Of a DNA stretch of 64,000 nucleotides, positions 1 to 64,000 are shown one piece after another (within the stretch, counting starts at the first letter, position 1; each line of letters opens with the position of its first letter). Under the pieces are notes generated by a model. It was not told the origin of the DNA and did no database searches. It was given only the letters and a program-made list of their open reading frames with translations. The translations under genes and the position numbers were made by a program. The DNA lies in sequence record MK250027.1; one strand, 5' to 3'.

Positions 1-308
1 ACACTTGTACCGTTTTTTATTACTCTTATTAATTCATTTATATCTTGTAACATAAATACTTTTCCTTCAGGATCAAAGAACTAATCATTATTAACAAATT
101 TTCTGTTTAATAAAATATCTTTTGTCTTTAATGGTAATAATCTTGAAGTAATTTTCTATGCAAATCCAGTGAACTCACCAGGAAGTGTGTATTCACTGAA
201 GAATAAACTACTTCCTGGTGTTCCCTGTTCACCGTCTTTACCTTGTATACCATAAGTGGCAATACCTGGTGCATATGTATCATTATGAAATCTCTAAGAA
301 ATCTGCAT
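1..308 (-). CDS. Partial (runs off window) virion/tail-fibre-like protein with short collagen-like G-X-Y stretch; TAG=Gln
   Basis: Manual translation from ATG at 308: MQISQRFHNDTYAPGIATYGIQGKDGEQGTPGSSLFF..., open to the window edge when TAG is read as Gln. Confidence 0.6.
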
Positions 309-313
309 ACTTT

Positions 314-3300
314 TTATCGCTTATAAATTTTAACTGTTGGATATATATTCTTACCAGTTGTTTCATTAATCACAATAGTTAGAGTATTTAAATTTTCTTT
401 TGTTTCTATATTTGTAGAATAATTTTCATACTTATAATATGTGTTTAAATTAGCTGGTTTTTCAGTTACTATATTTATATTTGAATTTGGTTCTGTGTCT
501 TTTGCATAAAGTTCAACTTCAATATTTGACTATGCATTATAATATACTGATAATGTATGATTTATATAATTTTTCTAACCTGTATATTGAGAATCTTTAA
601 AATAATTCCAATTTTCATTAAATGATTCATTATTTATAAAATGATTAAATATTGCGGATGTTAAATTTATAGTTATAACTGTATTACCTTGATTAATATC
701 AGAAATATTATATGAAGAATCTGAATAATTAACAGATAATATGTCATTCGCAGTAGGATAAACAAATTTATTAATTAATATATAATCATTATGAATAACC
801 ATACAGTGTGAACCTAAGAATGATTTATCATCAATTCCTGTTTTATGTCCATCAATACTTATATAATCATTTTCATTAAGATATTTACGATAATAATTAT
901 TATCCCATGTCGCGCTTAATAATGAACGATTATCTACTAAATAATAATTTTTATTTAATCTCTATAAATTAGTGTCTTCAAATACTTTATTACCTGGATA
1001 ATTCTGTATTCTATTAATATTTTTTATTTTTGTATTAGATTGCAATAAATCAACATTAAGAATATCTCGTAATTCATCATCTATATAAAAATCAACCATA
1101 TTATTCGTATTAGGTGTAAACCATCCGTAATTAAATTTAATCTAATTAGGTATTGATAATGTAAATATTAATGGATTATATTCTTCTGTATTATGTATTA
1201 ATTTAACCTCTGCTTTTTCTGGGATAATATATATATCAATATCATTAGTAAATGTATCAACATATCGTTTTAACTTATCCTTCGGTGTTTCTAATGATAT
1301 TAATTTTGATATATACTTCTTAAAATGTGTTAAATTAGTTCCTGTTATCAATTTCGTGTTAGTTAATAAGTTTGTTTTATCATTTTTATATGATATAATA
1401 AACTAATCACTATTAAGAATATTTGATAATTTTATATTGTTAACATTATTTACATTATTTTGTTTCTTTATAGTTAATCCTAATTTATTTTCATTTAATG
1501 TTATTAATTTCGGATTTAATACATTTGTTATATTTAAATGCTAACTTATATTTTTTCCTATAGTTGTAGTACGTCTTATAACATTTTCAAGGATCTATTT
1601 AGCTGTATGATTATATTCACCATCTGCCTTTGTAATAATATACGCATGACTATTACTTGATATTGAATTTACATGAGTTAATGTACCTGGATAATCAATA
1701 TACTCATAATTTGTTAATACACCAATATCATTATAATTATTAACAGAAACATATTCATTACAATCAACTGAATTTTCCATATTAAATGAAACAAACTATG
1801 GTGAATTAGTTGATAATGTTGTATTTACTATCGGTACATCATACTATGTAAATAATGAAGACCATAAATTATGTTCATCTATTAATGACATTAATTGTTT
1901 ATGAAAATTATTCTTCTTATGAGCATGAATACCATTATTCATACAGTTAAGTGTCCTGAAATCAATATCATATGGTGCGTTAAGAACTGCATAATCAGCA
2001 TAACTCTAATATTCATTTGTTGTAACATTCTTTATGTTAGATGTGCCTTCATGTGCATAATCAATATAGAACTAATGATTAATCAATAAGATGAACCTTT
2101 CTTTTAACGATATATAAATCTCATTAGTTTTTGATAAATCATAATCGGTTAAAACAAATGCTTCAAACCCTGAATAATCTTCAAGATGAATATAACTATT
2201 AACAACCTTTGTATTTAACTTAATATTAAATTTAATACCGGAAAATATAAACTCAAGACTTTTAATATTAGAATTATAATATACAGATGCTGTATCAATA
2301 TTAGTATTATCTATCAATAATTTTTTAATGGAATGCTGTACAGAACCATTTAATATACTTTCCTTATATGTAATTGATTCATTATTAATATACAATATAT
2401 TATCTACTTTATTAGTTACATATTGATTTGTATCATAATCTGCTACATTATAAGTATTTTCACAGAAATTACCATTAAATTCATAATTTTCATTTAATGT
2501 ATTAACATCTAATATGTTATTATTATCATAATATTGTCCATTAGATTTCCATAAACATTGTACAGATGGAACAATAGGATATAATAATTCACTATTACCT
2601 GTATTATTAGGATTTACAAAATAATTATTTGATTTTAATTCTGGAATTACAGTATCATAATTATATTCCTAATATTTTTGTTTGTCTGCTATTTTTAATT
2701 TAGTATTTTCTATAACAGATATTGAATTCAAATTATTTACGTTTATAGTTGTACTTATATATGCTGTTTTAGAAGGTGTTATTATAAATGTCGTTCCTTT
2801 AGACACATTTACTTTATTGAATTTAAGTTTACCATCTAAAACTTCATACATCACTCCATGTTGTATTCTATAATCCGTTTCATCTGTTGCAATAGTTTCA
2901 CCTGCCGGAATATCAATATATAAATTATCCTCATTATGTAATGTTCTGCTTAAATCAATAGTTGTATCTATATCTTTAATATTAGTAATACCCATTATAG
3001 CAACTGCGACTTCTGTAGGTTTATACAAATGAATCTTATTAGTTATTAATAACGAAGGATTAATAGTAGAAATCATGCATGTATTTACATCATATGGATT
3101 TGTTATTACGCATAAATCCTATGTTTTATTAATAAACTACTATTGATTATCTAAACTATAATTCTTATAATTATCTGGTTCCCATACATTATTTCTCAAA
3201 TATCCATTTGTAATATTAAATACATTAACTGTATCATAAATACCATTTGTGTTATAAATTAATGGATACTTAATTTTATTAACTAAGTCACTAATATCTG

Positions 3301-6300
3301 TATTAACAGAATATGTATAATTAAGTTCTTTTGTTGATTTAAACTTAACAACATTATTGTAACGCCAACCTAATGTTTCAAAACAATAATTGGAGAATGC
3401 ACAATAATAATTATCAAAATAATCTGATTGATTTGTCAATGCATGCATTTCATAAGTTATATTACTATTAAAATATGAAATAGTATCATCTTTAATATTA
3501 ACAGGATCTTCTGATTCAACATAACAATGTAAATCACTTATATTATTTAAATAATTATGTTCAGAATTATTATCTATATTCTTTATCCAATCATTTTCAT
3601 TATCATCCGGTTGTATATCATTTTCAATATATTTAATACCATTATGTTTAATAAATGAAATACTGTTATTATATTCTTTATTTGTTGTATATAATGATGA
3701 TACAAGACCATTTACTTTATCAAATCCAAAATAATCATAATGAAAATCATCAAACTTTGGTGCTAATATATGTTGAACATACATATTATCATATGATGAA
3801 ATTATAGAAATACTCTTATCATTATAAGATCCAACTTTAATTATATTAGTATTAAATTTCTCAATACATTTTATAATACGATTAATCTGTACATCTAATG
3901 TTGCAGTTATATCATTATATTCCAAATCCTATGAATAAAATGAAATTCTATAGAAATAAGTATTTTCAGAATATCTACATTTCTATTTGGCAACATATGG
4001 ATTTATATTATAATCAGTCTCTAATAATCTATCATCATTTGATGCAATTATTTCATATACAATATGTTCAGTTGTAAACTTATTTGTTTCATATGTATTA
4101 CCAGCATTAGTAACAGAAGATTTAATAGGATAATCCTATGCAATAAATTTAATATGTTCACCACATTCAATAGGTTTATTGAAATGTAATATTATAAAAC
4201 TTTTATCAGTATCTTTATCTATCTTAATTTCTGATGAATCTAATGACATTAAATTTGAGTCTGGAGTATTAGTGACATAATTCTTAAAGAAATTCTTTAA
4301 ATCAATATCAGTCTAAACTCTACCTACATTATTATTTGTTATTGCGAAGAATAATCTATCATAATATTTCTTATCGAATATTACTTTATAAATATTCTCA
4401 TCTCCTTTATAAATATCACCATTTTCATCATATTTAGTTAATACTGTATTTCCTGTACTATTCTTAGAAGAAACAACATAACCATAATTAATGAAATCAT
4501 TTGCAGTTAAATATAATCCAAAATAACGATGCATAGAATATTCTTCCATATCATTATCATCAAACATAAACTCAAGGTTTATAATATTGGAATATATAAG
4601 ATTATGTCTTTCAAAGCCAGCAATAATATAATTATTAAACATTTCTTGTTTATTAGCTATATCTGAATTTAATATTTTAGATCCAAAATATGTTGTCTCT
4701 GACTAATTAACAAGAATGCCTCTATCTACTGATATACCTTTCCATATATTATTGCCTTGTCTATAATAAGGAGAATTCTAATTATAATCCTGTTCAATAA
4801 ATTGCAAATAACATTGTCCATAATTAGACAACATATTCTTATAATTATTAAGATATTGTCCAATAGATGTTGTTGTTCTTAAATCAAATGTCTTTATAAC
4901 CTTTGATTCTTTAATTAATTTCTTTAATTTTTCTGTATCATTAATTCCTTCACCTGAATATGTCTCTTCATTAAATATATCGTCATATCTGAATATCGCG
5001 AAGAATTCTGGTACATTATTTCCTATATGTAATGGCGCGAGAATCTTCATATTTTCAGAATAAAGACTATCTGTATTTGTTTCTGCACCATATTCATACA
5101 TTGTTTCATATTGATCTTTATAATCAGTATAAACCTTATGTGCTTTCAGAGAATTTTCTGGTAATCCAAATAAATTTTTAATAGGAATTTTACTGAATAC
5201 CTTTTTTATATCTCTTGGATAATTACCATCAGATGAAATAGGGTATTTACGAACATTCTTATTATTTAATACAGCATTAGCTTTAAATGTATCAAGATAT
5301 AAGTTATAATCTTTATCTACAACTAATTTAATATTTCCAGATAACTTTGGATTTGCTCTTAATAACATTGATGAATGATGTTGTGTATTAAGTTCATAAC
5401 CTTTATTATCATAATTTGTTAGATGCTTTTCATTTTCATCATTAGTAACTATTAATCGTCCGTTTATTTTATTGCTAGATTTATCAGTAATAGTTAAAAC
5501 AATATCTTCTGATGAGCTAATAGGATAATCATCATCTAAACTTATTGTAAATATACCAGGTTCTATCCTATTTTCAAATATAATATTATTATCTGTTTTA
5601 TTTATGAAATCATTAATATGAACACCATTAATTCTTAAATAATTTTTCAAAGCATTATTCTATAATGTTATAATATAATTTGAAGGAGTTTCTGTTTTTA
5701 CACGAATATTACTTCCATATACAGATATTTTATTTATAACAGACTATGTATTAATATCAGATATTTTTTTATCTTTTAAAACTATCATATCCGGTACTTG
5801 TTCTTTTAATTTATCCTAATCAATTATCAACTAATCTGTAATTTTGTCAACATATGAAATTTCTAAATTTGCTTCAATATCTGTTAAACTTTTATCGGAT
5901 ACTTCTTTTTCTGTATTTGTATAATCATATACATCTGTTAAATAAATATAATTTCCAGATAAAATAGGATATACACCATATCTAGGAATTTGTTTTGTTA
6001 AAGGATTCGCACATTCTTTTGTTTCAATACTATGTCCGTCTTCATCTATGTCTATTTCATAATTATATAATTTTTCATTATTGTTTATATCGTCATTACC
6101 AGTTGCTATTTCATACTTAGGTTTATCTTCATCCGTATTTATTAATACATAACGATGATATATAGCTCTATAAGAACTGTCTATACAACTTATACTCTTT
6201 TCACCTAATGTTATTAATTTTGTGTTATCAGCTATATTACCATTATTAGGATAATCGTTATTATCTTGGACAGGTACACTATAAATTATAGTATCTTTAT

Positions 6301-7645
6301 TATTAATAGTAGTATCATTATACTTATTACATATACGATTACTAAAATTATACATTTCTTTATAATCATTGAAGAATTCGGTTTCATCCTAATCAAAAAA
6401 CACGCTTGAATCAAATCGATTATATATTCTATATGAATTATTATGTGTACAAAAATTCTTGATTATAAAATCATTAATACTAAAGCTATAATTTTCAGCA
6501 TTATTATGATATATTTTTATATTAGTTCTATATGTCTTAAAAGGCTCTTTATCATTATTAAACGTAAATGAGCCGTTAATATTAAAAGTATAAAAATCAT
6601 TCTATGCATCCTTATCAACTTTAGTCGTAATATTTCTATCTTTAATATAAGTATTATATACAGTAGGAGACCAGATAAAAACAGGTTTATAATATATAAA
6701 TTTTAATGGTACTGATTTTTGTTTATATCCTAAATAAGCATTCTAAGAAACAACACATTCTGTATATGCACTAACAGACAATAATGATTTAGGATCTGTA
6801 TATATTGCACTAATTTGAAACCTTAATACATTTCGGTCTTCCTATATAAAATTATCAGGTACATACAATAAATTTGTATGTGGTATTAATGTATTATTAT
6901 CTGTATTATAATCAAATGCTGGTAATAATAATGTATTGTTATTAAGTTTATCATCTTCCCATTTTGGTAAAGTTATATCCTTAATTGCCTCTTGTAATTT
7001 CTGCTCTTCTATATTAATTTTATTATTATTATATAAAATTACGGGTTTAATAATTAATTTAAATGGAAAGTCACCTATATTTTTATCATATAAATTCCAA
7101 TTAGTTAATGAATCATTAATATGTGATTTATTATCGCTCCAATATATTTTAACATTAATCTTATAATTTGCAACATAATGATCATCAATATAACCTCCAT
7201 TAAAATTTGAATTAAATGCACTTGGTAAATCATTACCAATATTTACAAATGTACCTTCATCATATGTAGAATCGTCAGAATGAAATAATAAGTCACTAAA
7301 TATATTATTTGCTATATTTTTATTAACATTAATATTATTTAATGGGAATATATTTCCATAAATTATTTTATTTGAATTTTTCTCTGAATTCTTTCCATAA
7401 AAAGGTAATTTATCAAATTTTGCTGTTAATTCCATTTTAACAGGATATGGTAAATCACTATTTATATTTTCTTTATCTTTAAACTAAAACGAATCAGGGT
7501 CATATACATATCCTAATTTATCTGTATTCATGACAGGAATTGGATATTCTACATCTTCATACCCATTTATTAAAACAGATGAATTAATAACAACATCTCT
7601 CTTATTTGGTGTTAACTTAAATAAATATTTCTTTTCTTTTGCCAT
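314..7645 (-). CDS. Giant (2443 aa) putative virion structural protein; TAG=Gln
   Basis: Track ORFs 575-802, 1142-1351, 1595-1780, 2072-2395, 2669-3076, 3140-3925, 4313-4642, 4778-5650, 5831-6355 and 6842-7435 share one frame. I scanned the gaps and found only TAG, with no TAA/TGA until 314-316. Function inferred from operon context. Confidence 0.8.
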
Positions 7646-7747: not shown

Positions 7748-10003
7748 TTAATCATCTTCTGAAACACTAATATCATAATTAATATAATTAATACTTGCAA
7801 TATCTCCAAGATAACCAACGCTATCAAACTCTTTATCGATAGTATCAACTTTATCCTATAATGATATAGAAGTAATTACTTTTGTTCCTGATGATTCATC
7901 TGTATTCTCATACGCTATATTTTTTGCTATGTGTTTAAAATACAAACCATTAACTGAATTACTATTAGGTATTGTATCATCAAGGTGCGAAGTAACTCCA
8001 GACGAACTTAATGTATTATTAATAGCGATAGTTAACGCATCATCATTTACATCCTTAATTAAATCTGCAATTTCATTTGTTGATGAAAGATTATCAGGAA
8101 ATGATATAATAATAGAATTAGACCAATCTGATCTTAAAGGATTTGTTGGATAACCTGCTTCTGATATTGATCTTACTTTAATCTCTACACGTTCACCTTT
8201 CTAAATAGGTATATCTATTTGATTAATGTTAACTTCCGTGGAATCTGCGACATTCTCAACAACCCATTTATAGCCGTTACCATCATTTACTTTTGTCTTC
8301 ATCTATGACTATGATATATTCCAATCAGAGAATGTACCTGTAACGCTTGAACCTGTATTCTAATCATTATATGTAAATGTATTTAATAATACAGGTGTAT
8401 TATCTTCTTTAACATAACGATATGCAATATCAAATCCTATAATTTCTTCTTGTAATTCAGAATTTCCTATACGTGTTTTCTATACAGGTATAGAAAAGAA
8501 ACCTCTGATTCTATATTTAGGATCTGTTAATAAGGCACCATTTGAACGAACTTCAGACTAAAACGCAGAAACATTACTTGAATAACTAGACTATGCATTC
8601 TATAATTCCAATGTTTGTGTGTTTATTTGCTCCTGTTTCGCGTTATAATCACTGATGTTAGTAATATTCTATAACTCTGATTTTAAGTCCGCTATGGCAG
8701 ATTTAAGGCTATCTATCTTTGTCTTATCATCTGCAATAAGAGCTGCTGTATTCTTAATAGTTGTTGTGTCAATTGCCGCATTAATTTGTGTGTTAACCTA
8801 TACGACTCTCATATCGGATTCTGATAATGTTGGTGCATTTGGTTTCTAACCACTCCATGCGGTAACAGTTCTCTCCTTAGCCTCATCAATCATCTTTGCG
8901 CCCCAATCAACTACATAATTACTGTAATATTCAGATAATGAAGTTGTTGATACATTACCATTATTATCTTCATATAAAAGATTATCAGTATCAACTCTAA
9001 TCGGTGTTGACCATGTATCTCCTTGAAGATTATATGCTTCTGAAATACCTTTTACATATATAATATCATATTCATGTGCACCAACTCTTACAGAAATAAC
9101 TTTACTTCTGAATGGATCTTCATAATAATTAAGTGTCGCATAAACACCTGGCAAAGCCGCTCCTGTAATTCTCTTTAATCTTACCTTACTTGAATTCTAG
9201 TTAATCGCTATAATCTCAAATATTGAATCACTATATGATAACTAATCTCCAATAGATAACACATTATTTTTCCCCTAATCAATACCTTCGTTTGATATTG
9301 TAGAATATGTTATATTATCCAATGTATACCAAACATTACCGTTAATAATATCTGGATCCTATATAATCTAGAAAATTCCTGATTTAGTATTTCTTACTAA
9401 TGGTAGTTGAACAATCTCTTCATCTTCAGAATATGAAATATTATTATTAGCTAATAATGATTTCAATGAAAGATAATCCATACCAGATGTTATTTGATTA
9501 TTATTCCACAATGTTGTAGCTGAATCATCATTAGAATTAAGAATTACCCTTACAACCTTAACTCTATCTGCATCATCTTCTATCTAACCTGTTAAATCAA
9601 TATCGACAGTTAATCCTGGAAACATTAAGTCTTCAAAGAACCAATTAGTATCTAATTTAAATGTAGATGGATCTTGTAAACCTGCAATCTATGTCGGTGT
9701 CTAAGGAATCGAGCTCAACTTAATAGTTCTTCTTGAACCATCGTTAAGATTAATTGTTCCTTTACCAGTTGAAAGTGAATTAAGCGAATCTTCAACAGCT
9801 TTCAACCTATTAACAATCGAAGCATAACTTGGTAATTGATATTTAGAATTTGTTCCCTATGTATCTTGATATTCATAAGTTACGAATGTATCATTAGTTG
9901 TTAAAGATCTTTGCATAGCGGATAATAATGAAAGTTCATTAGTTTGCTATGCAATAGTCTTACGCATATTCTCTGCAAAACTGTTTATATTATTTGTACT
10001 CAT
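7748..10003 (-). CDS. Putative virion structural protein, 751 aa; TAG=Gln
   Basis: ATG 10003 (MSTNNINSFAENMRK...) to TAA 7748 with only in-frame TAGs; includes track ORF 8846-9154. Confidence 0.75.
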
Positions 10004-10016
10004 CTTATATTATCCG

Positions 10017-51479: not shown

Positions 51480-51484
51480 AATAT

Positions 51485-53892: not shown

Positions 53893-54022
53893 GAAGTGCG
53901 TAGTTTAAATGGTAAAACATCCTTTGAGTAGGACTCTGACGAGAGATAGATAACAATGTTAGACTCTATTTAATTCCATTGTTTTATTAATGAGTATAGG
54001 TTCGAATCCTATGGTACTTCCA
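53893..54022 (+). ncRNA. tRNA-like RNA with ~60-nt central expansion
   Basis: GAAGTGC/GTACTTC, D arm GTTT/AAAC, T arm ATAGG-TTCGAAT-CCTAT; irregular anticodon arm. Confidence 0.6.
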
Positions 54023-54310
54023 AATTTATATAGATAAAAAGATTCTGGTGATTAGATAAAACATTATAAGAAAAGAGAAAAAACTTAGGTAACTGCAGAT
54101 AACTAAGGGTCGTAAGAGTATATGAAGAAAGATGAACTATGGATACCTCCTTATAATGCGTTTTATCAATAATTAAAGTAGTCTATAATATAAGTTCATT
54201 AACGTTATAGAAAAAACGAATATTGATAAGTCTACTATGCAGATGGGGCATTGAGAATGCCGTATAGTTCTAAAGCATCGTAAAACAGTTTATTTATATA
54301 TTTTTAATAT

Positions 54311-54385
54311 GGCTAGATAGCTCAGTTCGGTTAGAGCGCGTGATTCATATCCACGAGGTCGTGTGTTCGATCCACACTCTTGCTA
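54311..54385 (+). tRNA. tRNA with CAT anticodon (Met or Ile2)
   Basis: GGCTAGA/TCTTGCT; CGTGA-TTCATAT-CCACG; GTGTG-TTCGATC-CACAC. Confidence 0.85.
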
Positions 54386-54464
54386 CAGTGTTTTTAGTTG
54401 TTTATTAATGATTTGAGATATATCAATTTTTGGTATATCTCTTTTTTATTTAGAAAATAATTTG

Positions 54465-54472
54465 TATCTTTG
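54465..54472 (+). promoter_or_regulatory. Bacteroidota -7 promoter element
   Basis: TATCTTTG. Confidence 0.75.
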
Positions 54473-54498
54473 TATTATTAATTTAAATTTAATAGGTT

Positions 54499-54990
54499 AT
54501 GAAGAAATATAAAGTATATCAACTTCGTCGAGAAAATGAAGTTATTATCGATGATAATGAAATATATGATGCAAGAATGAAAGTTATTGCAGAGTATGAA
54601 ATTAAATCAGATAGAATTGATTTTGATATTATTTCAGAAGATATATGGCATTTATGTAATGTTCATTGTTGGGATAGATCATGGCATGCAGGTGAAGGTG
54701 TTCAGAAAGATGATATTATATTAACTCCTACATCTGACTTTGATGGTTTCTGTAATAGTGATATTGTCGTAGAAACCGAAGATGGACTTTATCTTGCAGA
54801 ATCATTTGGATTTATGAAAGTAAATTCGTTAGAAGATGCATCATATAGAATCATTGCGAGATTTCCGTTTATTTCGTGGGATAATATGAGAAATAAGAAT
54901 GAATATGATAAAGATAAACTATCTGAAGTAAAACGTAAGATTGATTATGAGAATAAATTGATGTTAGAAGAATATAAAAATAAAAAATAA
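54499..54990 (+). CDS. Early hypothetical protein
   Basis: ORF. Confidence 0.75.
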   Translation: MKKYKVYQLRRENEVIIDDNEIYDARMKVIAEYEIKSDRIDFDIISEDIWHLCNVHCWDRSWHAGEGVQKDDIILTPTSDFDGFCNSDIVVETEDGLYLAESFGFMKVNSLEDASYRIIARFPFISWDNMRNKNEYDKDKLSEVKRKIDYENKLMLEEYKNKK

Positions 54991-55040
54991 TTTTTTGGAA
55001 TAATTTCTCCTAAATATTTTTTTATTTAAAAAAGAACATG

Positions 55041-55048
55041 TATCTTTG
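55041..55048 (+). promoter_or_regulatory. Bacteroidota -7 promoter element
   Basis: TATCTTTG. Confidence 0.75.
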
Positions 55049-55095
55049 TATTGTAAATAATAAACATATAATAAACAATTAAAAATATAAAAATT

Positions 55096-55533
55096 ATGGC
55101 AACAGTTAAGATTTCTCCAGCACAGGTTTTTCCAGTAGCAAACAAGATTCGTGCAGCAAAGCACATCTCAATGAAGGAAGCATACGCAGAAGCAAAGGCA
55201 CAGCTTATTGCTGAAGCAGAGAATGCAGTTAAGACAGCAGAGACTGTAGTTGAAGTACCTACTAATGTTGTAGAGATTCCTGTAAATATGGAGTTGCATG
55301 CACAGCTTGTAGAGAAGATGCAGAATGCAAATGTAAAGTTCGTATTCTTGAACAATAAGGGTAAGAAGATTATCACTACTGGTACTTTGAATATGTCAAA
55401 GGTTCCTACAAACCGTAAGGTACAGGGACGTAAGGAAGTAAAAGATGAGAACACACAGGTATTCTATGATGTTCGTCATGGTGTATATCGTTCATACCAG
55501 AAGGATAAGTTGGTAGAGATTATCTCTAAGTAA
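55096..55533 (+). CDS. WYL_2/DUF2693-like SH3-fold protein
   Basis: VKFVFLNNKGKKIITTGTLN...VFYDVRHGVYRSY. Confidence 0.6.
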   Translation: MATVKISPAQVFPVANKIRAAKHISMKEAYAEAKAQLIAEAENAVKTAETVVEVPTNVVEIPVNMELHAQLVEKMQNANVKFVFLNNKGKKIITTGTLNMSKVPTNRKVQGRKEVKDENTQVFYDVRHGVYRSYQKDKLVEIISK

Positions 55534-55926
55534 AATATTAAGTTATTAGTAACAAAAGGAAATAACAGGTTGTTTATTGAATGTAGACAATTTGTTATTT
55601 CCTTTATATAATATATAAATCGTTTCTGATAATAAATATAGAAGTGATTTTTATTTAATATGTTTATGAACTGATATTTTGCTAAGCATATGTCTGAATT
55701 GGAAAGCATATGTAATTTTCGTGCAATGTTCAATTTTAATTAATTTTAATTTTGATAGGTTAAGGAGTAAGCCTATAAGTGCGAATAATAAAGTCGTATT
55801 GAAAATCAAATTTTGATTCCATAAAAGTTGGAATATGGTTTTTGAAGGCTAAGATGAAGTTATAAGAGATATTTGATATATTTCTTTTCATCGAATAATA
55901 AAAAATAACATAGAAACAATTAATTT

Positions 55927-56529
55927 ATGAAGAAAAAAATGATGTTAAAGAAAATTTTATTATTTACGCTATTGTTTTTATTACCTTTCATATCAATAAA
56001 TGCCAGAACTATTGATAGTAATAATAATGCGTATGAAGAAGTAAATACAAAGACAACTACAGTAGTTAAACATACAAAGTCTAGTATTGAAAATTCACTA
56101 GTAGAAGAAGCTAGAACATATATCAAGTCGTTATATCCTGGTTGTCCAGATATAATTCCTAGTTATATTGTGAAAGCAGGTTTAGCAAATGGTATTGATA
56201 TTTGTTTTATGCTTGCTCAAACTCAATTAGAAACTACCTTTGGAAAGGCAGGTGTAGGAAGAACAACCTCAAGACGTTCTTTGTTTGGTATCGAGAAAAG
56301 ATACTATAAAAATTATAAAGAGGCTATTAATGCGTATGTAGACACATTAAGAACCAAATATTTAGTAAAAGGCCGTACAGAACAACATCTTATGAATAAT
56401 TATGTTAATAAAGACGGTCATCGTTATGCTGGTAATCCTAAGTATGAAAGTCAACTTAAGAAACATTATAATACAATTGCGTCTAAAACAAAAATAAAGC
56501 AATTGCAACACCAGTACAAGAGATTATAA
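55927..56529 (+). CDS. Glucosaminidase-like (GH73) peptidoglycan hydrolase with N-terminal signal/anchor
   Basis: Hydrophobic N-terminus; FMLAQTQLETTFG, SLFGI, INAYVDTLRTKY, RYAGNPKY. Confidence 0.7.
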   Translation: MKKKMMLKKILLFTLLFLLPFISINARTIDSNNNAYEEVNTKTTTVVKHTKSSIENSLVEEARTYIKSLYPGCPDIIPSYIVKAGLANGIDICFMLAQTQLETTFGKAGVGRTTSRRSLFGIEKRYYKNYKEAINAYVDTLRTKYLVKGRTEQHLMNNYVNKDGHRYAGNPKYESQLKKHYNTIASKTKIKQLQHQYKRL

Positions 56530-56656: not shown

Positions 56657-58030
56657 ATGGCTTTATTTTTAAATAACAATATGCAATACGGTTCTGATAA
56701 TAAGACATATAGTGATTCTATTGTAATGTGTTATAATAAATAGTTTTTCTCTGATTATGACACAGCCAAAGAATCATTAATAAATAAAAATTCATTACCA
56801 GGTGAAATTACATTTGCTTATTATTATGATAAAAATTCAGAGTATGGACAAAATGCTATTTTTTCTGTTGGACCATTAACTCAAGGATCAAATATCATAT
56901 ATAAAAACGCTAATGAAATAGATACAGTCGTAGATACATTAAATGAAACACTTACATATATAAATTCAAGTGTATCTAATATAGATGAACGAATTAATAC
57001 TTCATTAAATAATTGTAGAGATTATGTAGATGAAAAAATTGATGATTTTAAAGTAGATATATCAGAAATAGAAAGTAATTTAGACATTCTTAATCGCAGA
57101 TGTAAAGATGATAGTACAAATTTAAATTTATAGATTCGTACTTTAAGAATTGATATGAATAATAAATTTGATGATACTAATAAAAATATTAAAAAATATA
57201 TTGATAATACATCAACTGCAATTGTTAACTATATTAATAATACATCCGACAATATTGTTGATTATATTAATCGTTCAATTTCTGAATCTTTTGATAATAC
57301 AGTAGATAATACAAATTCATCTATTAATTATACAAAAAATGAATTGACAAGTTCTATTACTAATTTTAAGAATGAGTTAAATTAGAAAATCACAGGTTTA
57401 GAAGGTACTCATAATAGTGATATTACTCGTTTAACTAACATTATTGATGAAGATGTTAAAGCAGATTTAACTAGATTATCTAATAGATTAAATAATTATA
57501 TTATATCAAATGAAGCTAATATAAAATCTATCAATGAAAGTATATCCACAAATGTATTAACTTTAAATGATAAAATAGAATCAGTTGCTGGTAGAATTGT
57601 AGATTATAGTCCTAGACTTTCAGATATAGAAAAACAAATATCAGTTGTTAATAATATTCCAGCAACAATAGAAAGTCAAAATAAATCTATTTCAAATCTT
57701 AATGACAAAATGAAACAAATTGAGGACAAATATAATATACATTTTCAAGCTAATATAGAACAAAATCAAAAAAATATAACGTTATTAAACGAAAATATAT
57801 CTGATATTAAAATAGATATGGCTGAAATACGTACAAGTATTCGTGTAGATTAGGGTACAATAGGCGATAATATTAGAACTATAGAATAGAAAATAGATGA
57901 TATAATTGAAAGATTAACAAAAATAGATGTATCAATTAATACATTAGAAAATTATGATAAAACAAATGATGATACCCATAAAGATTTATTAGTAGAATTA
58001 AAATCTTATAAAAATTCATTAGATTATTAA
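56657..58030 (+). CDS. Coiled-coil late/virion protein, 457 aa; TAG=Gln
   Basis: Frame scanned, only TAG until TAA 58028. Confidence 0.75.
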
Positions 58031-58052
58031 AAATTAAAAATTAAATTATATT

Positions 58053-60608
58053 ATGGAATATAAAAGTGCGTTACTGAATGAGTTAATATCTATATTAGAT
58101 AAACGTAGTCAAATAGGAGAATAGAAATTATCAGATACTATTAATTATGTAAAAAGTTATGATTCATCTATTACACGTAAATTAAGTAATGATGTAGATA
58201 ATCTTAATTCTTCTATTAATAATGTTGGCGATTTAATTACAGGGAAATTAAATACAAGTATTAATAAAATTAATAGTGAATTAAGTTAGACTATATAGAA
58301 TGTATCCTCAAAATTAGATTCATCAATTAAAGAACTAATTAGAAATATTAATAGTTCATTTAATATAGTTAATAATGATCAAACATTATTATTATCTCAA
58401 CTTAAAGATGAATTAGGAATTGACATAAACAATGTTGATAATAAATATGATTCATTAGTAAGGAATTTATCAACTAATTTAAATAGTAGTATTTCAGATT
58501 TATCAACAAGACTTACACAAAAAGTTAATTCTATTGATACTAAATATGATTCTGATATAGATAGTTTAAAGTCTAAGCATGCAGAAGATATTGGCGAATT
58601 ATAGAGATTAATTAATAGTACTGAAGAAAAGTTATCAAATAAAGAAACAAGAGATATTGGATCTGTTGAATCTAATATAAGAACAACTGAAACAACTTTA
58701 AGAAATGATTATGGTACGAAGATAGATACTTTAAATACATCAGTTAATAATTATTTCAATAAACAAGATACAAATATTAATTATAACAATATTTCTATAG
58801 GTGAAGTATCTACAAGATTAAAAAGAGAGGTAGACAACTTATAGAATACATTAAATGTATCTACAACAGATATTTATAATAAATTAGGTATTATAGATAA
58901 TAAAATTGATACATCATTAAGTAACTTAAATGATAAAATTAATAATTAGTTTGATGCATCAATTAAAGCATTAAATACATCTATCATCACATTAAAAGGT
59001 GACATAAATACTAAATTTGTAACTACAAATACATCTATAAACTTATTAGATAGTAAATAGAAAAAAATAGACACATCATTATCAAATCTTATAAGAACAT
59101 TTAATGATTTGATATATACAGAAAAAGTTAATGGCATTATTGATACATTCAGAGAAATGGAAGATTTCTTAAGTAATATATCAGATGATAGTACATTAAC
59201 CGGAATGATGAAAGATCTTAAAACATCTATTGATCAACATATTAATAGTTCTATTGATGAAGTTAATGGAACTATTTCAAGTGTTAAATAGGAAATAGGT
59301 TCAAACATTAATACTCGTATTAATGCTCTTGAACAAACATTAAATACTACCGTAAATAATAATATCGTAGATATTAATTCTTCAATAAGTGATATTAGTA
59401 CAAAATTAGATGCATCTATTAAATAGCAATAGCAATATGTTCAAGGTAATATTGAAAGTATTAATTCTTCATTAGATAAATTAAATACAACTATTACATA
59501 GAATGTAGATACTTCATTAAAGAGTATTCAATCATAGTTAAATACATCTTTGAATACAGTTAATACAAGTATATCAGGATTAAATCAAGATATAGTAAAT
59601 ACAAAAAGTAGGGTTAGTAAGTTAGAATTAGAAAATGTTGTAAGTATTTAGAATACACAAGGTACAAATAATAAAACATGGAATAATAATAATAATTCTG
59701 TATAGGATGATACATATGTTGTAAATACATAGGTATTTAATACACATGTAAATGGTAAACCTGTAAAGCAATCAGTTCGTCTTGTTAATGATAATATTAT
59801 TAAAGAGATGAATAAATCTGAAAAAGCTGTTACAACATAGTTACTTGCAATTAATACAAAATTATCAAATATTGATAGTAGTATTTCAAATGTATTAGAT
59901 ACATCTTATATTAATAAGAAAAACAAATATACAACTAATGGATTTAATACAATTGGCACATGTTTAGATTTTATTATTAATGATATGTATTATACTGCAC
60001 CTGCTGCTGTTAATGTAACATATAATGTAACACCTACATCATTTATTAGAGGCAAGAATACTGCTGTTACATTTACATATAAAGTGAATAATTATCTTAA
60101 TAATATACAAAGTATTACTTATAATAATCAGTCAAAAACAGAAAAAGAATTTACAGAAACTATTACTGTTAATAATTCTGTATCTAGATCATTGTCTGTT
60201 ATATCAAATTATGTTGATAGTAAAGACGCGAAACCTGCTGCATTTACAAAAACAATATCATCTAATGCAACACTCGAATTATATGTATGGACATCAACCT
60301 CTACTACATTTAATAAAGCATATACAGCAAGTAATATGCCAGATGGTTATACAATATATAATTATAGTTCATCTAATTATAGTATTAATGTAAATAATGG
60401 TAATACTGCTAAATATATATTCTTTGTATCTGATAAGAATTTATCAGAAGCAAAGTTCTTTGTATATGAACATGGTGGTTCGCCTACATTAGGTGGTGGT
60501 ATTTCTAATTTAGGAACTATAACAATATAGAAATATGATATTGCGATAACATATTACTTATATAGATCAAATAATGTTCTTAACGGAAATTGGGACATTA
60601 AGTTTTAA
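58053..60608 (+). CDS. Long coiled-coil tail-fibre-like protein with beta-rich C-terminus, 851 aa; TAG=Gln
   Basis: Joins track ORFs 59109 and 59985; recurring LDSSI/LNTSI/IDTSL/LDASI units. Confidence 0.7.
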
Positions 60609-60644
60609 CAATAAATAATAAAAATAATTATATAATTTAATTAT

Positions 60645-63600
60645 ATGGCAATTAAAATTCCAGATACACTGAGAACATCGAATAGTACATATCCTATTGC
60701 GTTATCAGAAGAAATACAAGGTGGTATTCGTGGAGTTTAGACTGTAGATGATTTAAGTAAGATTAATAAAGCTTTAATATCAACTGGTATGTTAGTATGG
60801 GTTGAAAAGTCAAAGAGTTATTATAAGTATACTAATGGTGAATGGACCATATTATCTGCATCTGCATCAGGAACACCATTACTTACATCTGCATAGATTA
60901 AAGTTTTAAAAGAGCAAGGTGTTTTACCAGAGAATTATATTTGGATACGAACTAAAGGAGATAGTGATTTTATTGAAGGTGAAGTAACTAATAATACATA
61001 TAAAACATCAAATAACGGAAATTATATAGATATTTTATTTCAAGCTATAAGACAGTTACAAACAGAAGTTGCTAAAATGAGGAATACATTCAAATATGGT
61101 ATGTATTCTTGCACTAATAAAGAAATGGCAGTTTCAAATGTTGTTAATGAAATGAAAACAACTCCCGCAGAAGAACCATTATGGGCAATAGAAGAAGATG
61201 GATTATCTTATGTATATGCATTGGATTTTTTACAAGGATATGATAAAGATCCTTCAAAACAAACATATAGTTTTTTTACGAAAATAAATGGTTTGATTGA
61301 AAATGTTAATGGTTAGTATTATGATATTTCAGATACTAATCGAGAGAAATCAAAAAATGTATATTTTACTCATAAATCTACGGATTCTATGGATGATGAA
61401 GATATAGATGATAAAAGTATATTTAATGACGCAGATGGAAGGGCTCCTGAAAGTATTAGTATGTTGGAAGCAATGGATGATCCAAAACAATTTATTTATA
61501 TGACAATAACCAATAAAAAAGAAAATGGAAAAACTTTTTTATTGGATTTCTCCGTACTTATAGAGCCTAAAAAACATAAGTCTATATCTTCAGGTACATA
61601 GCGTGTTTCTATAGATAATATTAACTTCACTAATTTAATGCCAAATTATGTTGATACAGTTAATGTTATGTTATTACTTAATCGTAAAATGTGTAAAGAA
61701 ACAACTGTAGGAGATGTAACGACATATACATGGTATGGAAATAACTATCTATATGTTTCTATTAGTGATTATTATTCTAATGATGTAATTATTCAGGGAT
61801 ATTATAATAAAAATGATGGAAAACTTTATAAGAATATTCAAGATTTAGGTGATCAATATTTCTTTAGTACTGTATATTTTGGTAATTTAAAATTGAATAA
61901 ATTTAACATTTATTCAAGATATTAGGATTTTACTAAATTCATAAATGAAACAGATAAAGTTGTTAAACCTAATATACCTAATGATAGTGATTATAGATAT
62001 AAAGTTGCACATATAACAATACGTTCTGTTACTGATGAAGCGGAATTAAAAGAAATAAAACAATATCTTCCAAATAATGAATTAATATGGGAAGAAAAGA
62101 ATAGTGTTTTATGGATAAAAACAAACAATAAAACAGTACAAATTGGAGGTACTAGTAATTCAAATAATAACGGAAATCAAAATAACAATAATAGTGATAG
62201 TATGACACAAGAAGAATTAATAAAAGCCCTTAAGGAAATGGGTATTGTTTATGATTCAAATAATGGGTTAGAATTAGAATAGGCAAAAGTTGAGGACATT
62301 ACTTTTATTAATTCTAATTTGACAGACAAATATGTATATTCAATAGATTCAGAAGGAAATCTACATTCTACTATAGTTCCTAAAGTAACATTGAAATCAC
62401 GTGTTGCAAATAAAGGCTTATATGAATCAAATAAACCAGGTTCTACATTTACAAGTCGTGGATTCGTCGCAAATCTCGTGTGTGGTGAGAAGAATACGGA
62501 ATTAGGAATTGATAATACATTAAGTGCAAGTTCAAATGGTTCAATATTAAATGAATCTGATAGAATTCACATTTCTCAATTTTATGCTCCATTATCAACA
62601 GATATAGAAGAAGGTAAAATAGGATGTTCTCATGCATTTATAGAGTTAACAAATACATCTCCATATGATTTCTAGTTAGATGGATGCTATTTGCATTTCT
62701 TCTCACTTAATGATACAAATTAGACAACATATTATAATTTACCATTAAAGGGTGTAATTCCTGCAGGTAATACATTTTTGATTAGAGGCAAAAAATATGC
62801 TGATTACAAGAATTCCAATGTATTCATTAAGGTAAATTCATTTGATATAGAATGGTTTATAGAAAAAGATCAACTTATAGATTTAACCGTTAATACTATA
62901 TATAATGGATATGCACTTGCGTTAACATATGGTAATACAGTAGTAGAAAATGGAGTAGAAACAGAAATTAGTCCAGTAACAACATTAGCAAAAGTAGATA
63001 CAGATAAAACAAACAAATATAGAGATAATTATATTGACGGTATTATATATTCTTATAAAGTTGCTAATATTCCTAATACATATAGAACATGGGCTATATT
63101 TAATTCCGGATATAATGTATTATCTAATAGCTTATTTAGAGAAACATTCTTATTGGACCCATCAAAACAAGGTTATCAAGCATTGAATTCAAATAAGAAG
63201 GATACATCTAGAGTACGTCATGCTACAACAGCAGATTTCTAGTTATTATCTTTAGCAAATGAATTCATACAATTCCCAAAATCTGATTCAGTAAAAGCCG
63301 TTTCTGATTATACACCAAAAGCATCATTTGAACATAAAACAGTTATTACAGAAAAGAGTAATATTGATTTAAATAAACCAAATATGATTACATGTGCGTT
63401 TGGTATTAATATGTTAACAACAAGATGTTTTAACTGGATTTCAGGAGGTATTTTTGATGAATTCATTTGGATTAGAAAGAAAGGTAGTATAACAGCTTGG
63501 AAAGATTGTGTACGATATGAATCTTATACAAGTTCAAAATGTGGTGTTGTTACAGAAAAATCTACTAATGAAATTCAAAAGAAAACATTTAATGTTGATA

Positions 63601-64000
63601 ATGAAAAGATAAAGGAATTAAAAGAATGTGTATATGATAGAATAACAGGTATATTTCCTGGTACTACCACACAATATACTGCACATAAGGTAATAGTTAC
63701 ATTACCTACGCCGTCAACTGGCACATCAGAATATGAATATTGCGTTGGACGACCATTATTAGATGGTACACCTGATCCTGATCATACAAATGTATCAGAT
63801 CCATATACATTTACAATGTATGCAAGTTCTTATGTTCCTAGAGTTTATCAAACATCTGACCAACAAGGTTTCCATTGGATTGAATATCAAGTATGGGCTG
63901 GTGCAGCTAAGAAATTAAATGAATACATTAATAATACTAAGAGTACAACATATATGCCAGTATTAGTAAATACTGGTGATATGACTCAATCTGGTTCTCG
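60645..64000 (+). CDS. Partial giant protein (>1118 aa): lamin-tail-like domain + purple-acid-phosphatase-like N-domain + metallophosphoesterase; TAG=Gln
   Basis: Joins five track ORFs; FIELTNTSPYDF(Q)LDGCYL...GVIPAGNTFLIRG, TRCFNWIS, YEYCVG, TSDQQG, VNTGDMT. Confidence 0.75.

What the first reader, a model, noticed from the sequence alone, without database searches (positions are those of the whole stretch)
1..64000. TAG is reassigned to Gln, and only in one temporal class of genes
Dozens of track fragments join in frame across TAG with no TAA/TGA, giving proteins of up to 2443 aa. TAG lands on conserved Gln positions (GIY-YIG YIGQS). A CUA-anticodon tRNA with a U1-A72 Gln-type acceptor is encoded. 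TAG is abundant in structural genes, portal, protease and endonucleases, but absent from dnaK, dnaJ, grpE, fhs, prs, RNA ligase and all genes behind host-type promoters. Code-15 recoding is established for Lak and some crAss-like phages; the strict partition is visible directly here.
Basis: partly seen in the sequence, partly recalled or inferred. Interest (0 to 1): 0.7.

Follow-up and report, generated by a model that had tools for sequence, protein, structure and literature searches.

The report
Lak megaphage reads TAG as glutamine
This window is a piece of a Lak megaphage of gut Prevotella, whose already published habit of reading the stop codon TAG as glutamine in only some of its genes is fully confirmed here, and those genes sit behind a T4-like late promoter signal.

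Summary
The window is about 99.3% identical to Prevotella phage Lak-B1. Reading TAG as sense raises coverage by ORFs of 100 aa or more from 59% to 86%, and the longest ORF grows from 574 to 2443 aa. TAG aligns with glutamine: 108 of 112 distant GIY-YIG homologues have Q at the YIGQS column. Between Lak lineages TAG exchanges mainly with CAA and CAG. A tRNA(CUA) with glutamine-type features lies at 43017-43089. The partition is strong: 31 TAG-free genes against 8.4 expected. It is conserved between lineages: 0 of 127 Gln codons in TAG-free genes are TAG in Lak-A1, against 23 of 104 in TAG-rich genes.

All of this was published for this phage clade (Devoto 2019, Crisci 2021, Borges 2021/22). The finding is therefore correct but already known.

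I did not find the following in those papers:
- A Bacteroidetes-type promoter box occurs only before TAG-free genes.
- A T4-like AATAAATA box lies 30-40 nt before TAG-bearing genes.
- The gp55-like late sigma gene itself carries three TAGs.

"Strict" and "temporal" overstate the case. Two helicases carry TAG, the capsid gene has a single TAG, and no timing data exist.

The parts
43017..43089 (+). Suppressor tRNA with anticodon CUA. Glutamine-type features: U1-A72, G2-C71, G3-C70, G10, U35, A73.
   Evidence: ARAGORN finds it (the label 'Pyl' is only the program's default for CUA). Rfam tRNA score is 61.7 bits. The cloverleaf and a comparison with the Lak tRNA-Gln(UUG/CUG) genes are. A Bacteroidales tRNA-Gln shares U1-A72, G2-C71 and A73. 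The Lak-A1 copy has two compensatory changes in the anticodon stem and an unchanged loop, CTCTAAA.
42232..42993 (+). GIY-YIG homing-type endonuclease with 8 in-frame TAGs. One of them is the conserved Q of the YIGQS motif.
   Evidence: Pfam GIY-YIG, E = 3.4e-8. Translation. Q30 column: 108 of 112 distant homologues have Q. A standard-code homologue uses CAA at that column.
42226..43102 (+). Variable cassette holding the GIY-YIG gene and the tRNA(CUA). It is present in 11 of 15 Lak records. In Lak-B1, B3, B6 and B9 a 407-bp segment replaces it.
314..7645 (-). Giant ORF of 2443 aa with 30 in-frame TAGs and an ATAAATA box 35 nt before the start. Function unknown, probably virion-associated.
   Evidence: Twenty-four of its TAGs align to Lak-A1, with 10 changed from TAG to CAA/CAG and 7 in the reverse direction.
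7748..12896 (-). Three TAG-rich ORFs with 22, 13 and 12 TAGs, at 7748-10003, 10017-11897 and 11916-12896.
   Evidence: The first matches phrog_29329. Late boxes lie at -21 and -25.
13147..13542 (.). Assembly gap (N) inside a divergent A+T-rich intergenic spacer. No gene demonstrably crosses it.
13639..16936 (+). DEAD/ResIII helicase broken at its DECH box by a split intein with a free-standing endonuclease. ORF1 (13639-14712) is the N-extein plus IntN and has 1 TAG. The HEN ORF (14728-15969) has 8 TAGs. ORF3 (15953-16936) is IntC, with 1 TAG, plus the C-extein.
   Evidence: Pfam hits to ResIII, DEAD, Intein_splicing and Helicase_C. phrog endonuclease hit. Lak-B1 has the uninterrupted gene, which gives the exact junction.
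16994..19485 (.). Two TAG-rich genes, each with 8 TAGs and each with ATAAATA at -34 or -35: 16994-18475 (+) and 18730-19485 (-, tail-tube-like).
19501..27130 (+). Block of 12 TAG-free genes, including the RNA ligase (20082-20927) and a SAM-lyase-like gene (26240-27130). Host-type boxes start at 19552, 21104 and 24491.
28176..29300 (+). HNH-type homing endonuclease with 9 TAGs and a late box at -32. It sits 6 nt upstream of dnaK and did not align to the Lak-A1 stretch compared.
   Evidence: phrog_559, E = 1.8e-35..
29307..33128 (+). TAG-free chaperone genes: dnaK exon 1 (29307-29936), an ORF-less intron of group I type (29937-30523), dnaK exon 2 (30524-31855) and dnaJ (32040-33128).
   Evidence: Pfam HSP70 positions 1-195 and 210-599, and DnaJ. 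Weak group I intron match that includes the AAGAGAUAGUCU core.
33195..33581 (+). gp55-like late sigma factor of 128 aa. TAGs at codons 20, 33 and 46. ATAAATA box at -34.
   Evidence: phrog_234 'late sigma transcription factor', E = 4e-11. Its only PDB match is T4 gp55, 7d7c_F, E = 0.014. It is single-copy in Lak-B1, with 3 TAGs. Three TAGs are also counted in the aligned Lak-A1 gene.
35636..37646 (.). Three TAG-bearing genes of unknown function with 3, 6 and 3 TAGs. The first two have late boxes, at -30 and -32.
37769..42225 (+). TAG-free run just upstream of the suppressor cassette, including fhs (38374-40095).
   Evidence: Pfam FTHFS, E = 8.6e-205..
45491..48091 (+). T4-type portal (45491-47377, 14 TAGs, late box at -38) and a papain-family peptidase (47462-48091, 5 TAGs, late box at -30).
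   Evidence: Pfam Portal_T4, E = 1.6e-59, and Peptidase_C1, E = 5.3e-10..
48157..56529 (+). TAG-free block: host-type boxes starting at 48157, 50606, 54463 and 55039; the prs-like gene (48694-49563); grpE (49656-50258); a tRNA array (51485-54386); a WYL_2 gene; and a glucosaminidase gene (55927-56529).
56657..63998 (+). TAG-rich genes that look tail- or baseplate-like, with 5, 17 and at least 9 TAGs. Late boxes at -31 and -34. The last ORF runs off the end of the window.

Best explanation
The window is part of a Lak megaphage genome of the Lak-B type, a virus of gut Prevotella, which uses the standard code. The phage carries two sets of genes.

Set 1 has no in-frame TAG. It includes chaperones, fhs, prs, the RNA ligase, the tRNA array and, elsewhere in the genome, RF2. 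Part of this set sits behind a box that matches the Bacteroidetes primary-sigma -7 element. These genes can be transcribed and translated by the untouched host.

Set 2 uses TAG for about half of its glutamine codons. It includes the portal, a peptidase, tail-like and giant ORFs, homing endonucleases and the gp55-like sigma factor. Its genes sit 30-40 nt downstream of an AATAAATA box that resembles the T4 late promoter.

A phage tRNA(CUA) derived from tRNA-Gln is presumably charged by the host GlnRS, since no phage GlnRS was found. It inserts Gln at UAG. The phage RF2 keeps UAA and UGA as stops. Until enough suppressor is present, set-2 proteins terminate early. That includes the late sigma factor (TAGs at codons 20, 33 and 46) and the capsid protein (TAG at codon 11). 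The code switch therefore acts as a translational gate placed on top of, and upstream of, the late transcription switch.

What is shown: the recoding, its meaning (Gln), the partition, the conservation of the partition, and the two motif classes. What is inferred: the timing, charging by host GlnRS, the role of RF2, and the gating function.
For: Identity. The portal is 97.5% identical in protein to Lak-B1 through B9. The DNA is about 99.3% identical to Lak-B1 positions 370468-433256.

Recoding.

Meaning of TAG:
- The conserved Q30 column of the GIY-YIG protein has Q in 108 of 112 distant homologues.
- Summed log-odds over 22 TAG columns give Q +20.2 bits and the next residue +3.6.
- Against Lak-A1, window TAG aligns with TAG 61 times, CAA 24, CAG 16 and K codons 7.

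tRNA.

Partition:
- In the window there are 31 TAG-free genes against 8.4 expected, with p = 4e-16.
- In Lak-B1, 333 of 548 ORFs are TAG-free against 111 expected, and they are clustered along the genome (runs z = -8.7).

Selection. In TAG-free genes 0 of 127 Gln codons are TAG in Lak-A1. In TAG-rich genes 23 of 104 are.

Promoter classes:
- The host-type box precedes 44 TAG-free Lak-B1 ORFs, 1 ORF with a single TAG, and none of the 163 ORFs with two or more TAGs (p = 1e-8).
- The late box lies at -30 to -40 in 78 of those 163 ORFs against 41 of 333 TAG-free ORFs (p = 4e-17). In the window the figures are 13 of 19 against 2 of 31 (p = 6e-6).

Late sigma.

Other machinery. The RF2 gene of Lak-B1 is TAG-free, and no GlnRS was found there.

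Capsid gate. The TAG at codon 11 of the capsid gene is conserved in Lak-A1, B1 and C1.

Literature. The same conclusions on code 15, Sup-CTA, RF2 and TAG-rich structural regions appear in PMC6784885, PMC8346664 and bioRxiv 10.1101/2021.08.26.457843.
Against: - There are no timing, RNA-end or protein data. No RNA run holds the window.
- Only 44 of 333 TAG-free ORFs show the host-type box, and no third motif was found for the rest.
- The box's -33 TTTG partner is not evident in the consensus.
- Helicases carry TAG, and Borges et al. state that Lak replication genes are mostly in the alternative code. The TAG set is therefore not simply 'late structural'.
- The capsid gene almost avoids TAG and a possible lysin has none. 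Expression level may shape TAG use as much as timing does.
- The tRNA(CUA) has no recognisable promoter box of its own, so when it is made is unknown.
Confidence: 0.85

Rival explanations
1. TAG use tracks translational cost or expression level rather than infection time. UAG is decoded slowly and in competition with RF1, so genes that need much protein avoid it and low-copy genes tolerate it. On this reading the two classes are expression classes.
For: The Lak-B1 capsid gene has the highest GC in the genome (0.42) and prefers CAG. It has only 1 TAG among 27 Gln-type codons. dnaK and dnaJ are also outliers in GC and CAG use.
Against: Mean GC of the two classes is nearly the same, 0.273 and 0.259. 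Many TAG-free genes are small genes of unknown function. The host-type box is exclusive to TAG-free genes and the late box is enriched before TAG genes. The single capsid TAG sits at codon 11 and is conserved in three lineages, which looks like a gate rather than drift.
Confidence: 0.2
2. The TAG-free class is simply recently acquired host DNA (dnaK, dnaJ, grpE, fhs, prs) that has not yet had time to accumulate TAG.
For: These genes have cellular homologues, and dnaK and dnaJ have atypical GC.
Against: Phage DnaK is only 46-52% identical to the best Bacteroidota matches returned, so the acquisition is old. These genes are shared by Lak-A and Lak-B at 57-78% codon identity, yet none of the aligned Gln codons has become TAG. 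In TAG-rich genes 22% have. Most TAG-free genes have phage-typical GC.
Confidence: 0.04
3. TAG is read as something other than, or in addition to, Gln. For example, the tRNA(UUA) found in every Lak genome has a non-Gln acceptor stem and could read TAG. Or TAG is still a stop and the fragments are the real products.
For: ARAGORN labels the CUA tRNA 'Pyl'. Lak-B1 has a tRNA(UUA) with G1-C72. Crisci et al. found this tRNA in 51 of 51 Lak genomes. Many TAG columns are variable in distant homologues.
Against: Q is by far the best-scoring residue. TAG exchanges with CAA, a two-base change, more often than with any one-step neighbour. ORFs of up to 2443 codons without TAA or TGA are conserved across lineages. 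TAG shows no excess near the 3' ends of ORFs.
Confidence: 0.03

Closest known systems
Lak megaphages of Prevotella, genetic code 15 (Devoto et al. 2019, PMC6784885; Crisci et al. 2021, PMC8346664)
   Same: This is the same phage clade. DNA is about 99.3% identical to Lak-B1, and the tRNA cassette is 100% identical to Lak-B7 and B8. The published features match: GC of 26%, TAG read as Q, a Sup-tRNA(CTA), RF2, TAG-free regions longer than 5 kb, and TAG-rich structural regions.
   Different: Nothing essential differs. This copy has a split-intein and endonuclease insertion in a helicase gene that Lak-B1 lacks. Its dnaK intron also lacks the ORF that Lak-B1 carries there.
Stop-codon recoding as a regulator of late and lytic genes in gut phages: crAss-like, Agate, Jade and others (Borges et al., bioRxiv 10.1101/2021.08.26.457843; Ivanova et al. 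2014)
   Same: The model is the same: early genes in the standard code, late structural genes recoded, suppressor tRNA and release factor as switch parts. They also report a recoded homing endonuclease inside an early gene.
   Different: They stress lysis genes as the most recoded. Here the only recognisable peptidoglycan hydrolase (55927-56529) has no TAG. The searches I ran in these papers turned up no promoter-motif analysis or gp55 link. Only the Devoto paper was searched for the word 'promoter', which does not occur in it.
Phage T4 late transcription: gp55 sigma with the TATAAATA late promoter (established knowledge; structure 7D7C)
   Same: There is a gp55-like protein. An A/T-rich octamer, AATAAATA, that differs from TATAAATA at one position lies at a fixed distance before late-type genes.
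   Different: The Lak protein is shorter, 128 aa against 185. gp33-like and clamp partners were not sought. The sigma gene itself needs UAG suppression, which has no T4 counterpart.
Fractured genes: split inteins separated by a free-standing homing endonuclease gene (Dassa et al. 2009, from memory)
   Same: The helicase is cut at its DECH box into an N-extein plus IntN, a separate endonuclease ORF, and IntC plus a C-extein that begins with Cys.
   Different: Splicing was not tested. The endonuclease (8 TAGs) and IntC (1 TAG) are recoded, so the helicase of this variant would depend on suppression more than the intein-free Lak-B1 allele does.

Membership tests
Lak megaphage (Prevotella phage Lak clade) | Near-identity of DNA and marker proteins to published Lak genomes | tested here: met
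   The portal is 97.5% identical to Lak-B1 through B9 and 92.6% to Lak-A1 and C1. Five collinear blocks are 98.5-99.5% identical to Lak-B1.
Genetic code 15 (TAG read as Gln) in a phage | In-frame TAG inside conserved ORFs, with coding density restored when TAG is read as sense | tested here: met
   Coverage rises from 59% to 86%. 187 in-frame TAGs occur in 53 genes.
Genetic code 15 (TAG read as Gln) in a phage | TAG columns correspond to Gln in homologues that use the standard code | tested here: met
   Many portal TAG columns are variable. The strong signal comes from GIY-YIG Q30, portal Q297 and the codon exchange between lineages.
Genetic code 15 (TAG read as Gln) in a phage | A cognate suppressor tRNA(CUA) is encoded | tested here: met
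Genetic code 15 (TAG read as Gln) in a phage | A release factor that spares UAG (RF2) is encoded | tested here: inconclusive
   RF2 is not in the window. It is present and TAG-free in the near-identical Lak-B1, at 291632-292768. The window's own genome is not held.
Genetic code 15 (TAG read as Gln) in a phage | Gln shown at UAG in the protein | not testable with these tools
   This needs proteomics.
T4-type late transcription system | A gp55-family sigma factor | tested here: met
   phrog_234, E = 4e-11. T4 gp55 is the only PDB hit, at E = 0.014, which is weak.
T4-type late transcription system | A TATAAATA-like box upstream of late genes | tested here: met
   AATAAATA peaks at -30 to -40 from the start codon. 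The enrichment has p = 4e-17. No transcript ends have been mapped.
T4-type late transcription system | A gp33 co-activator and dependence on the sliding clamp | not tested
   Not searched.
Bacteroidetes primary-sigma promoters (-33 TTTG, -7 TAnnTTTG; established knowledge) | A -7 TAnnTTTG element | tested here: met
   TGTATCTTTG occurs 8 times exactly in the window, always on the + strand and before TAG-free ORFs. In Lak-B1 it precedes 44 TAG-free ORFs and none with two or more TAGs.
Bacteroidetes primary-sigma promoters (-33 TTTG, -7 TAnnTTTG; established knowledge) | A -33 TTTG element at the right spacing | tested here: inconclusive
   The consensus upstream of the box is T-rich but shows no clear TTTG.
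Split intein / fractured gene | An IntN that starts with Cys, an IntC that ends in Asn followed by Cys, and an intein-free allele that gives a seamless junction | tested here: met
   The N-extein ends in DE and IntN begins CCHPDT. IntC ends in ISN and the C-extein begins CHH. The joined reading restores the DECHH sequence found in the intein-free Lak-B1 gene. The Pfam Intein_splicing score is 34.8 bits, just under the cut-off of 35.8.

The most novel reading that the evidence does not exclude
The code switch may be wired into a T4-like transcription cascade.
- A host-type promoter box occurs only before TAG-free genes.
- A gp55-type late box precedes TAG-bearing genes.
- The only gp55-like sigma gene carries three N-terminal TAGs, and the capsid gene carries one conserved TAG at codon 11. 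Suppressor supply would therefore gate late transcription itself, not only late translation.
- The suppressor locus appears to exist as two alleles. One is an intron-less tRNA(CUA) linked to a GIY-YIG endonuclease. The other is a tRNA(CUA) interrupted by a 245-nt intron of group I type in Lak-B1, B3, B6 and B9, the genomes whose published tRNA count is one lower. If so, all 15 original Lak genomes encode a CUA suppressor.
Probability: 0.55. Interest if true: 0.55.

Novelty: already known. Interest (0 to 1): 0.3.

Why it matters
The core finding repeats what is published for this exact phage clade, so its value is confirmation. Annotation of this window must use code 15, or about a quarter of it falls into fragments.

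The additions give the gating hypothesis concrete parts that can be tested: two promoter boxes, a late sigma gene that needs suppression, a single conserved 'gate' TAG in the capsid gene, and a second, intron-bearing suppressor allele. No Lak phage has been cultured, so sequence-level predictions of this kind are what reporter assays in Bacteroides or Prevotella, or metatranscriptome 5'-end mapping, could test.

Tried and rejected
- Other reassignments. TGA as sense gives no longer ORFs. TAA as sense only adds many short spurious ORFs in this 26% GC DNA.
- Pyrrolysine. This is only ARAGORN's default label for a CUA anticodon. The alignments favour Q.
- The 151-aa ORF across the gap. It is an artefact of N.
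- Whole-genome analysis of the window's own assembly. No genome is held, and the nearest held record is an 86.6-kb fragment. I used the public Lak-B1 record instead.
- A third, 'middle' promoter motif for TAG-free genes that lack the host-type box. No k-mer survives multiple testing.
- Recent transfer from the host as the cause of TAG-free genes. Rejected.
- Single-TAG ORFs as exceptions. In Lak-B1, 35 of 52 have the TAG in the first fifth of the ORF, so most are probably over-extended starts. The helicase TAG at codon 106 is a real exception.
- TAG as an occasional terminator. There is no excess of TAG near the ends of ORFs.
- RNA evidence. No RNA run holds the window.
- Reaching Prevotella genomes by name. 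I used a Rikenellaceae genome, reached through a dnaK locus, for a Bacteroidales tRNA-Gln.
- Pfam on the large TAG-rich ORFs. It gave no informative family.

Full report
**What the window is.** The DNA has 26.1% GC and one run of N at 13147-13542. Its T4-type portal protein is 97.5% identical to those of Prevotella phages Lak-B1 through B9 and 92.6% identical to Lak-A1 and C1. Five collinear blocks covering almost the whole window are 98.5-99.5% identical to Lak-B1 positions 370468-433256. It is therefore a Lak-B-type megaphage. The window's own assembly is not held, so I fetched the public Lak-B1 record and part of Lak-A1 for comparison.

**The assembly gap, tested first.** The N run lies in a 742-nt spacer between two divergent genes, 11916-12896 (-) and 13639 (+). 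The flanks are 88-90% A+T, and no open run longer than 25 codons touches the gap in any frame. The '151-aa ORF' at 13103-13558 is N translated as X, and I dropped it. The flanks map collinearly to Lak-B1 with similar spacing, 376 nt against 396 N. I did not read or fill the letters, and nothing below depends on them.

**Is TAG sense?** With TAG as a stop, ORFs of 100 aa or more cover 59% of the window and the longest is 574 aa. With TAG as sense, coverage is 86% and the longest stop-to-stop frame is 2451 codons. Making TGA sense changes nothing. Under TAG=Q, 19 ORFs hold 3-30 in-frame TAGs, 4 hold one, and 31 hold none. Every complete ORF ends in TAA or, twice, in TGA, and never in TAG.

**What does TAG mean?** Four lines of evidence point to glutamine.
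- *Conserved column.* In the GIY-YIG endonuclease (42232-42993) the Q of YIGQS is a TAG. 108 of 112 distant homologues have Q there. One of them is a standard-code gene with CAA at that column and TAG as its terminator. Another database homologue is itself recoded, so not all of the homologues are independent.
- *Log-odds.* Over 22 TAG columns of the portal and GIY-YIG alignments, summed log-odds give Q +20.2 bits. T is next at +3.6 and every other residue is negative. Most portal TAGs sit on variable columns.
- *Codon exchange.* In codon alignments with Lak-A1, window TAGs match TAG 61 times, CAA 24 times, CAG 16 times and Lys codons 7 times. The reverse direction shows the same pattern. The two-base change between TAG and CAA is commoner than any one-step change to another amino acid, which is the behaviour of synonymous codons.
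- *The tRNA.* The tRNA at 43017-43089 has anticodon CUA, U1-A72, G2-C71, G3-C70, G10, U35 and A73. The tRNA-Gln genes of Lak-B1 share U1-A72, G2-C71, G3-C70 and A73, and a Bacteroidales tRNA-Gln shares U1-A72, G2-C71 and A73. The Lak-A1 copy differs by two compensatory pair changes in the anticodon stem and keeps the loop.

**Is the partition real?**
- In the window TAG makes up 32% of all Gln-type codons. Under homogeneity 8.4 genes would lack it, but 31 do (chi-square p = 4e-16).
- In genes with three or more TAGs, TAG is 49% of Gln codons.
- Out-of-frame TAG is equally frequent in both classes, so composition is not the cause.
- In Lak-B1, 333 of 548 ORFs are TAG-free against 111 expected. 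Eight of these are ORFs of at least 600 aa, against 0.07 expected. The classes are clustered along the genome (runs z = -8.7).
- The classes are maintained by selection. Between the window and Lak-A1, 23 of 104 CAA/CAG codons in TAG-rich genes are TAG in the other lineage, and 40 of 123 TAGs are CAA/CAG. Among 127 aligned Gln codons in TAG-free genes, none is TAG.

**What are the classes?**
- *TAG-free genes* include the RNA ligase, a SAM-lyase-like protein, DnaK (two exons), DnaJ, GrpE, formate-tetrahydrofolate ligase, a divergent ribose-phosphate pyrophosphokinase, a GT25 glycosyltransferase, a WYL_2 protein and a glucosaminidase.
- *TAG-bearing genes* include the portal, a papain-family peptidase, tail-tube-like, baseplate-like and tape-measure-like proteins, giant ORFs, three homing-type endonucleases and a gp55-like late sigma factor.

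**Two upstream motifs separate the classes.** A discriminative k-mer search on Lak-B1 upstream regions found both.
- *Host-type box.* TGTATCTTTG contains the Bacteroidetes -7 element TAnnTTTG (established knowledge). It lies 32-57 nt before 44 TAG-free ORFs, one ORF with a single TAG, and none of the 163 ORFs with two or more TAGs (p = 1e-8).
- *Late box.* AATAAATA is one base away from the T4 late promoter TATAAATA. It peaks sharply 30-40 nt before the start codon of 78 of those 163 ORFs, against 41 of 333 TAG-free ORFs (p = 4e-17).
- *In the window.* All eight exact host-type boxes are on the + strand before TAG-free ORFs. The late box precedes 13 of 19 TAG-rich genes and 2 of 31 TAG-free genes (p = 6e-6).

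I found no promoter-motif analysis or gp55 link in the Lak and recoding papers I searched. Only the Devoto paper was searched for the word 'promoter', which does not occur in it.

**A link between the code switch and the transcription switch.** ORF 33195-33581 matches the phage 'late sigma transcription factor' family (phrog_234, E = 4e-11). Its only PDB match is T4 gp55. It is single-copy in Lak-B1. It carries TAGs at codons 20, 33 and 46, three TAGs are also counted in the aligned Lak-A1 gene, and it has a late box at -34. If this protein drives the AATAAATA promoters, late transcription itself waits for the suppressor. This is inference.

**Limits of 'strict' and 'temporal'.**
- The DEAD-box helicase has an internal TAG at codon 106 in both the window and Lak-B1.
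- The DnaB-like helicase of Lak-B1 has 3 TAGs. Borges et al. say that Lak replication genes are mostly in the alternative code.
- The major capsid gene of Lak-B1 has the genome's highest GC and 26 CAA/CAG codons. Its one TAG, at codon 11, is conserved in Lak-A1, B1 and C1, and a GATAAATA box lies at -61. This looks like one gate codon in a gene that otherwise avoids a costly codon.
- The glucosaminidase gene has 7 Gln codons and no TAG. If it is the lysin, that runs against the published emphasis on recoded lysis genes.
- Most single-TAG ORFs are probably over-extended starts.

**Switch parts outside the window.** Lak-B1 encodes a TAG-free RF2 near host-type boxes and no GlnRS. This fits charging by the host enzyme. 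These points, and the tRNA(UUA) found in all Lak genomes, are published.

**The suppressor locus is polymorphic.** The cassette holding the GIY-YIG gene and the tRNA(CUA) (42226-43102) is present in Lak-B2, B4, B5, B7, B8, A1, A2 and C1. In Lak-B1, B3, B6 and B9 a 407-bp segment replaces it. These four are the genomes listed with 30 rather than 31 tRNAs. The replacement contains two tRNA halves separated by 245 nt. That spacer gives a weak, full-length group I intron match with the P7 core. Splicing after the U of a U-G pair and after a terminal G gives a canonical cloverleaf with U1-A72 and anticodon CUA. The product is 55/73 identical to a Bacteroidales tRNA-Gln. The splice sites are my prediction and are not shown experimentally.

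**Mobile elements.** The window's helicase is cut at its DECH box by a split intein with a free-standing endonuclease gene, and Lak-B1 has the uninterrupted gene. dnaK is interrupted by a 587-nt ORF-less intron of group I type. Lak-B1 carries an extra 356-aa ORF there, with 8 TAGs and a late box. Four of the five endonuclease-type ORFs examined are TAG-rich even when they sit inside or beside TAG-free genes. Borges et al. noted the same for an Agate phage.

**Verdict.** The finding is already known for this clade, so interest is low to moderate. The promoter classes, the TAG-gated sigma and capsid genes, and the intron-bearing suppressor allele are the parts worth a follow-up.

Noticed in passing
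window 13639-16936: The DEAD/ResIII helicase gene is split at its DECH box. ORF1 ends in an intein N-half. A free-standing endonuclease ORF with 8 TAGs follows. ORF3 begins with an intein C-half that ends in ISN, followed by Cys. Lak-B1 has the intact gene, so this is a presence/absence polymorphism of the 'fractured gene' type.
   Followed up: partly
window 29937-30523: dnaK is interrupted between HSP70 profile positions 195 and 210 by a 587-nt ORF-less insert. The insert gives a weak group I intron match that includes the AAGAGAUAGUCU core. In Lak-B1 the insert is about 910 bp longer and holds a 356-aa zinc-finger ORF with 8 TAGs and a late box.
   Followed up: partly
window 42226-43102; Lak-B1 MK250020.1 412033-412348 (locus L023 12033-12348): The cassette with the GIY-YIG gene and the tRNA(CUA) is replaced in Lak-B1, B3, B6 and B9 by a tRNA-like gene whose halves are separated by a 245-nt intron of group I type. 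Predicted splicing gives a second, different tRNA(CUA) with U1-A72. tRNA finders miss it, which may explain why some Lak genomes were reported without a CUA suppressor.
   Followed up: partly
window 44945-45354 (+): An Rfam tmRNA match sits exactly at the gathering score (47.3 bits against 47) just upstream of the portal gene. ARAGORN does not call it. I did not look for a tag peptide.
   Followed up: no
Lak-B1 MK250020.1 52583-54586 (-); loci L146 and L147 for Lak-A1 and C1: The major capsid gene (Gp23 family) has the highest GC in the genome (0.42), prefers CAG, and has a single TAG at codon 11. That TAG is conserved in Lak-A1, B1 and C1. A conserved GATAAATA lies 61 nt upstream.
   Followed up: partly
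window 33195-33581: The gp55-like late sigma factor gene carries three TAGs in its first 46 codons and has its own late-type box. This suggests a feed-forward or autoregulatory loop that depends on the suppressor.
   Followed up: partly
window 55927-56529: The glucosaminidase-domain protein, a possible endolysin or virion lysin, has no TAG among 7 Gln codons and no recognised promoter box. It lies directly before TAG-rich tail-like genes.
   Followed up: no
window 51485-54386 and 53772-53886: An array of eight tRNA genes (His, Pro, Arg x2, Gly x2, Cys, Met) lies behind a host-type box at 50606. There is also a 115-nt Rfam-only tRNA match that probably contains an intron.
   Followed up: no
Lak-B1 MK250020.1 344976-345048: A tRNA with anticodon UUA and a G1-C72 acceptor stem, which is not Gln-like, lies outside the window's range. 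TAA is the stop of 483 of 548 ORFs, so how this tRNA is tolerated remains unexplained. Competition from the phage RF2 is one possibility.
   Followed up: no
Lak-B1 genome-wide: In ORFs with several TAGs, the TAG codons are mildly enriched in the first tenth of the ORF (169, against 111-147 in the other tenths; chi-square p = 0.01). This fits early termination as a gate, but over-extended start codons may contribute.
   Followed up: partly
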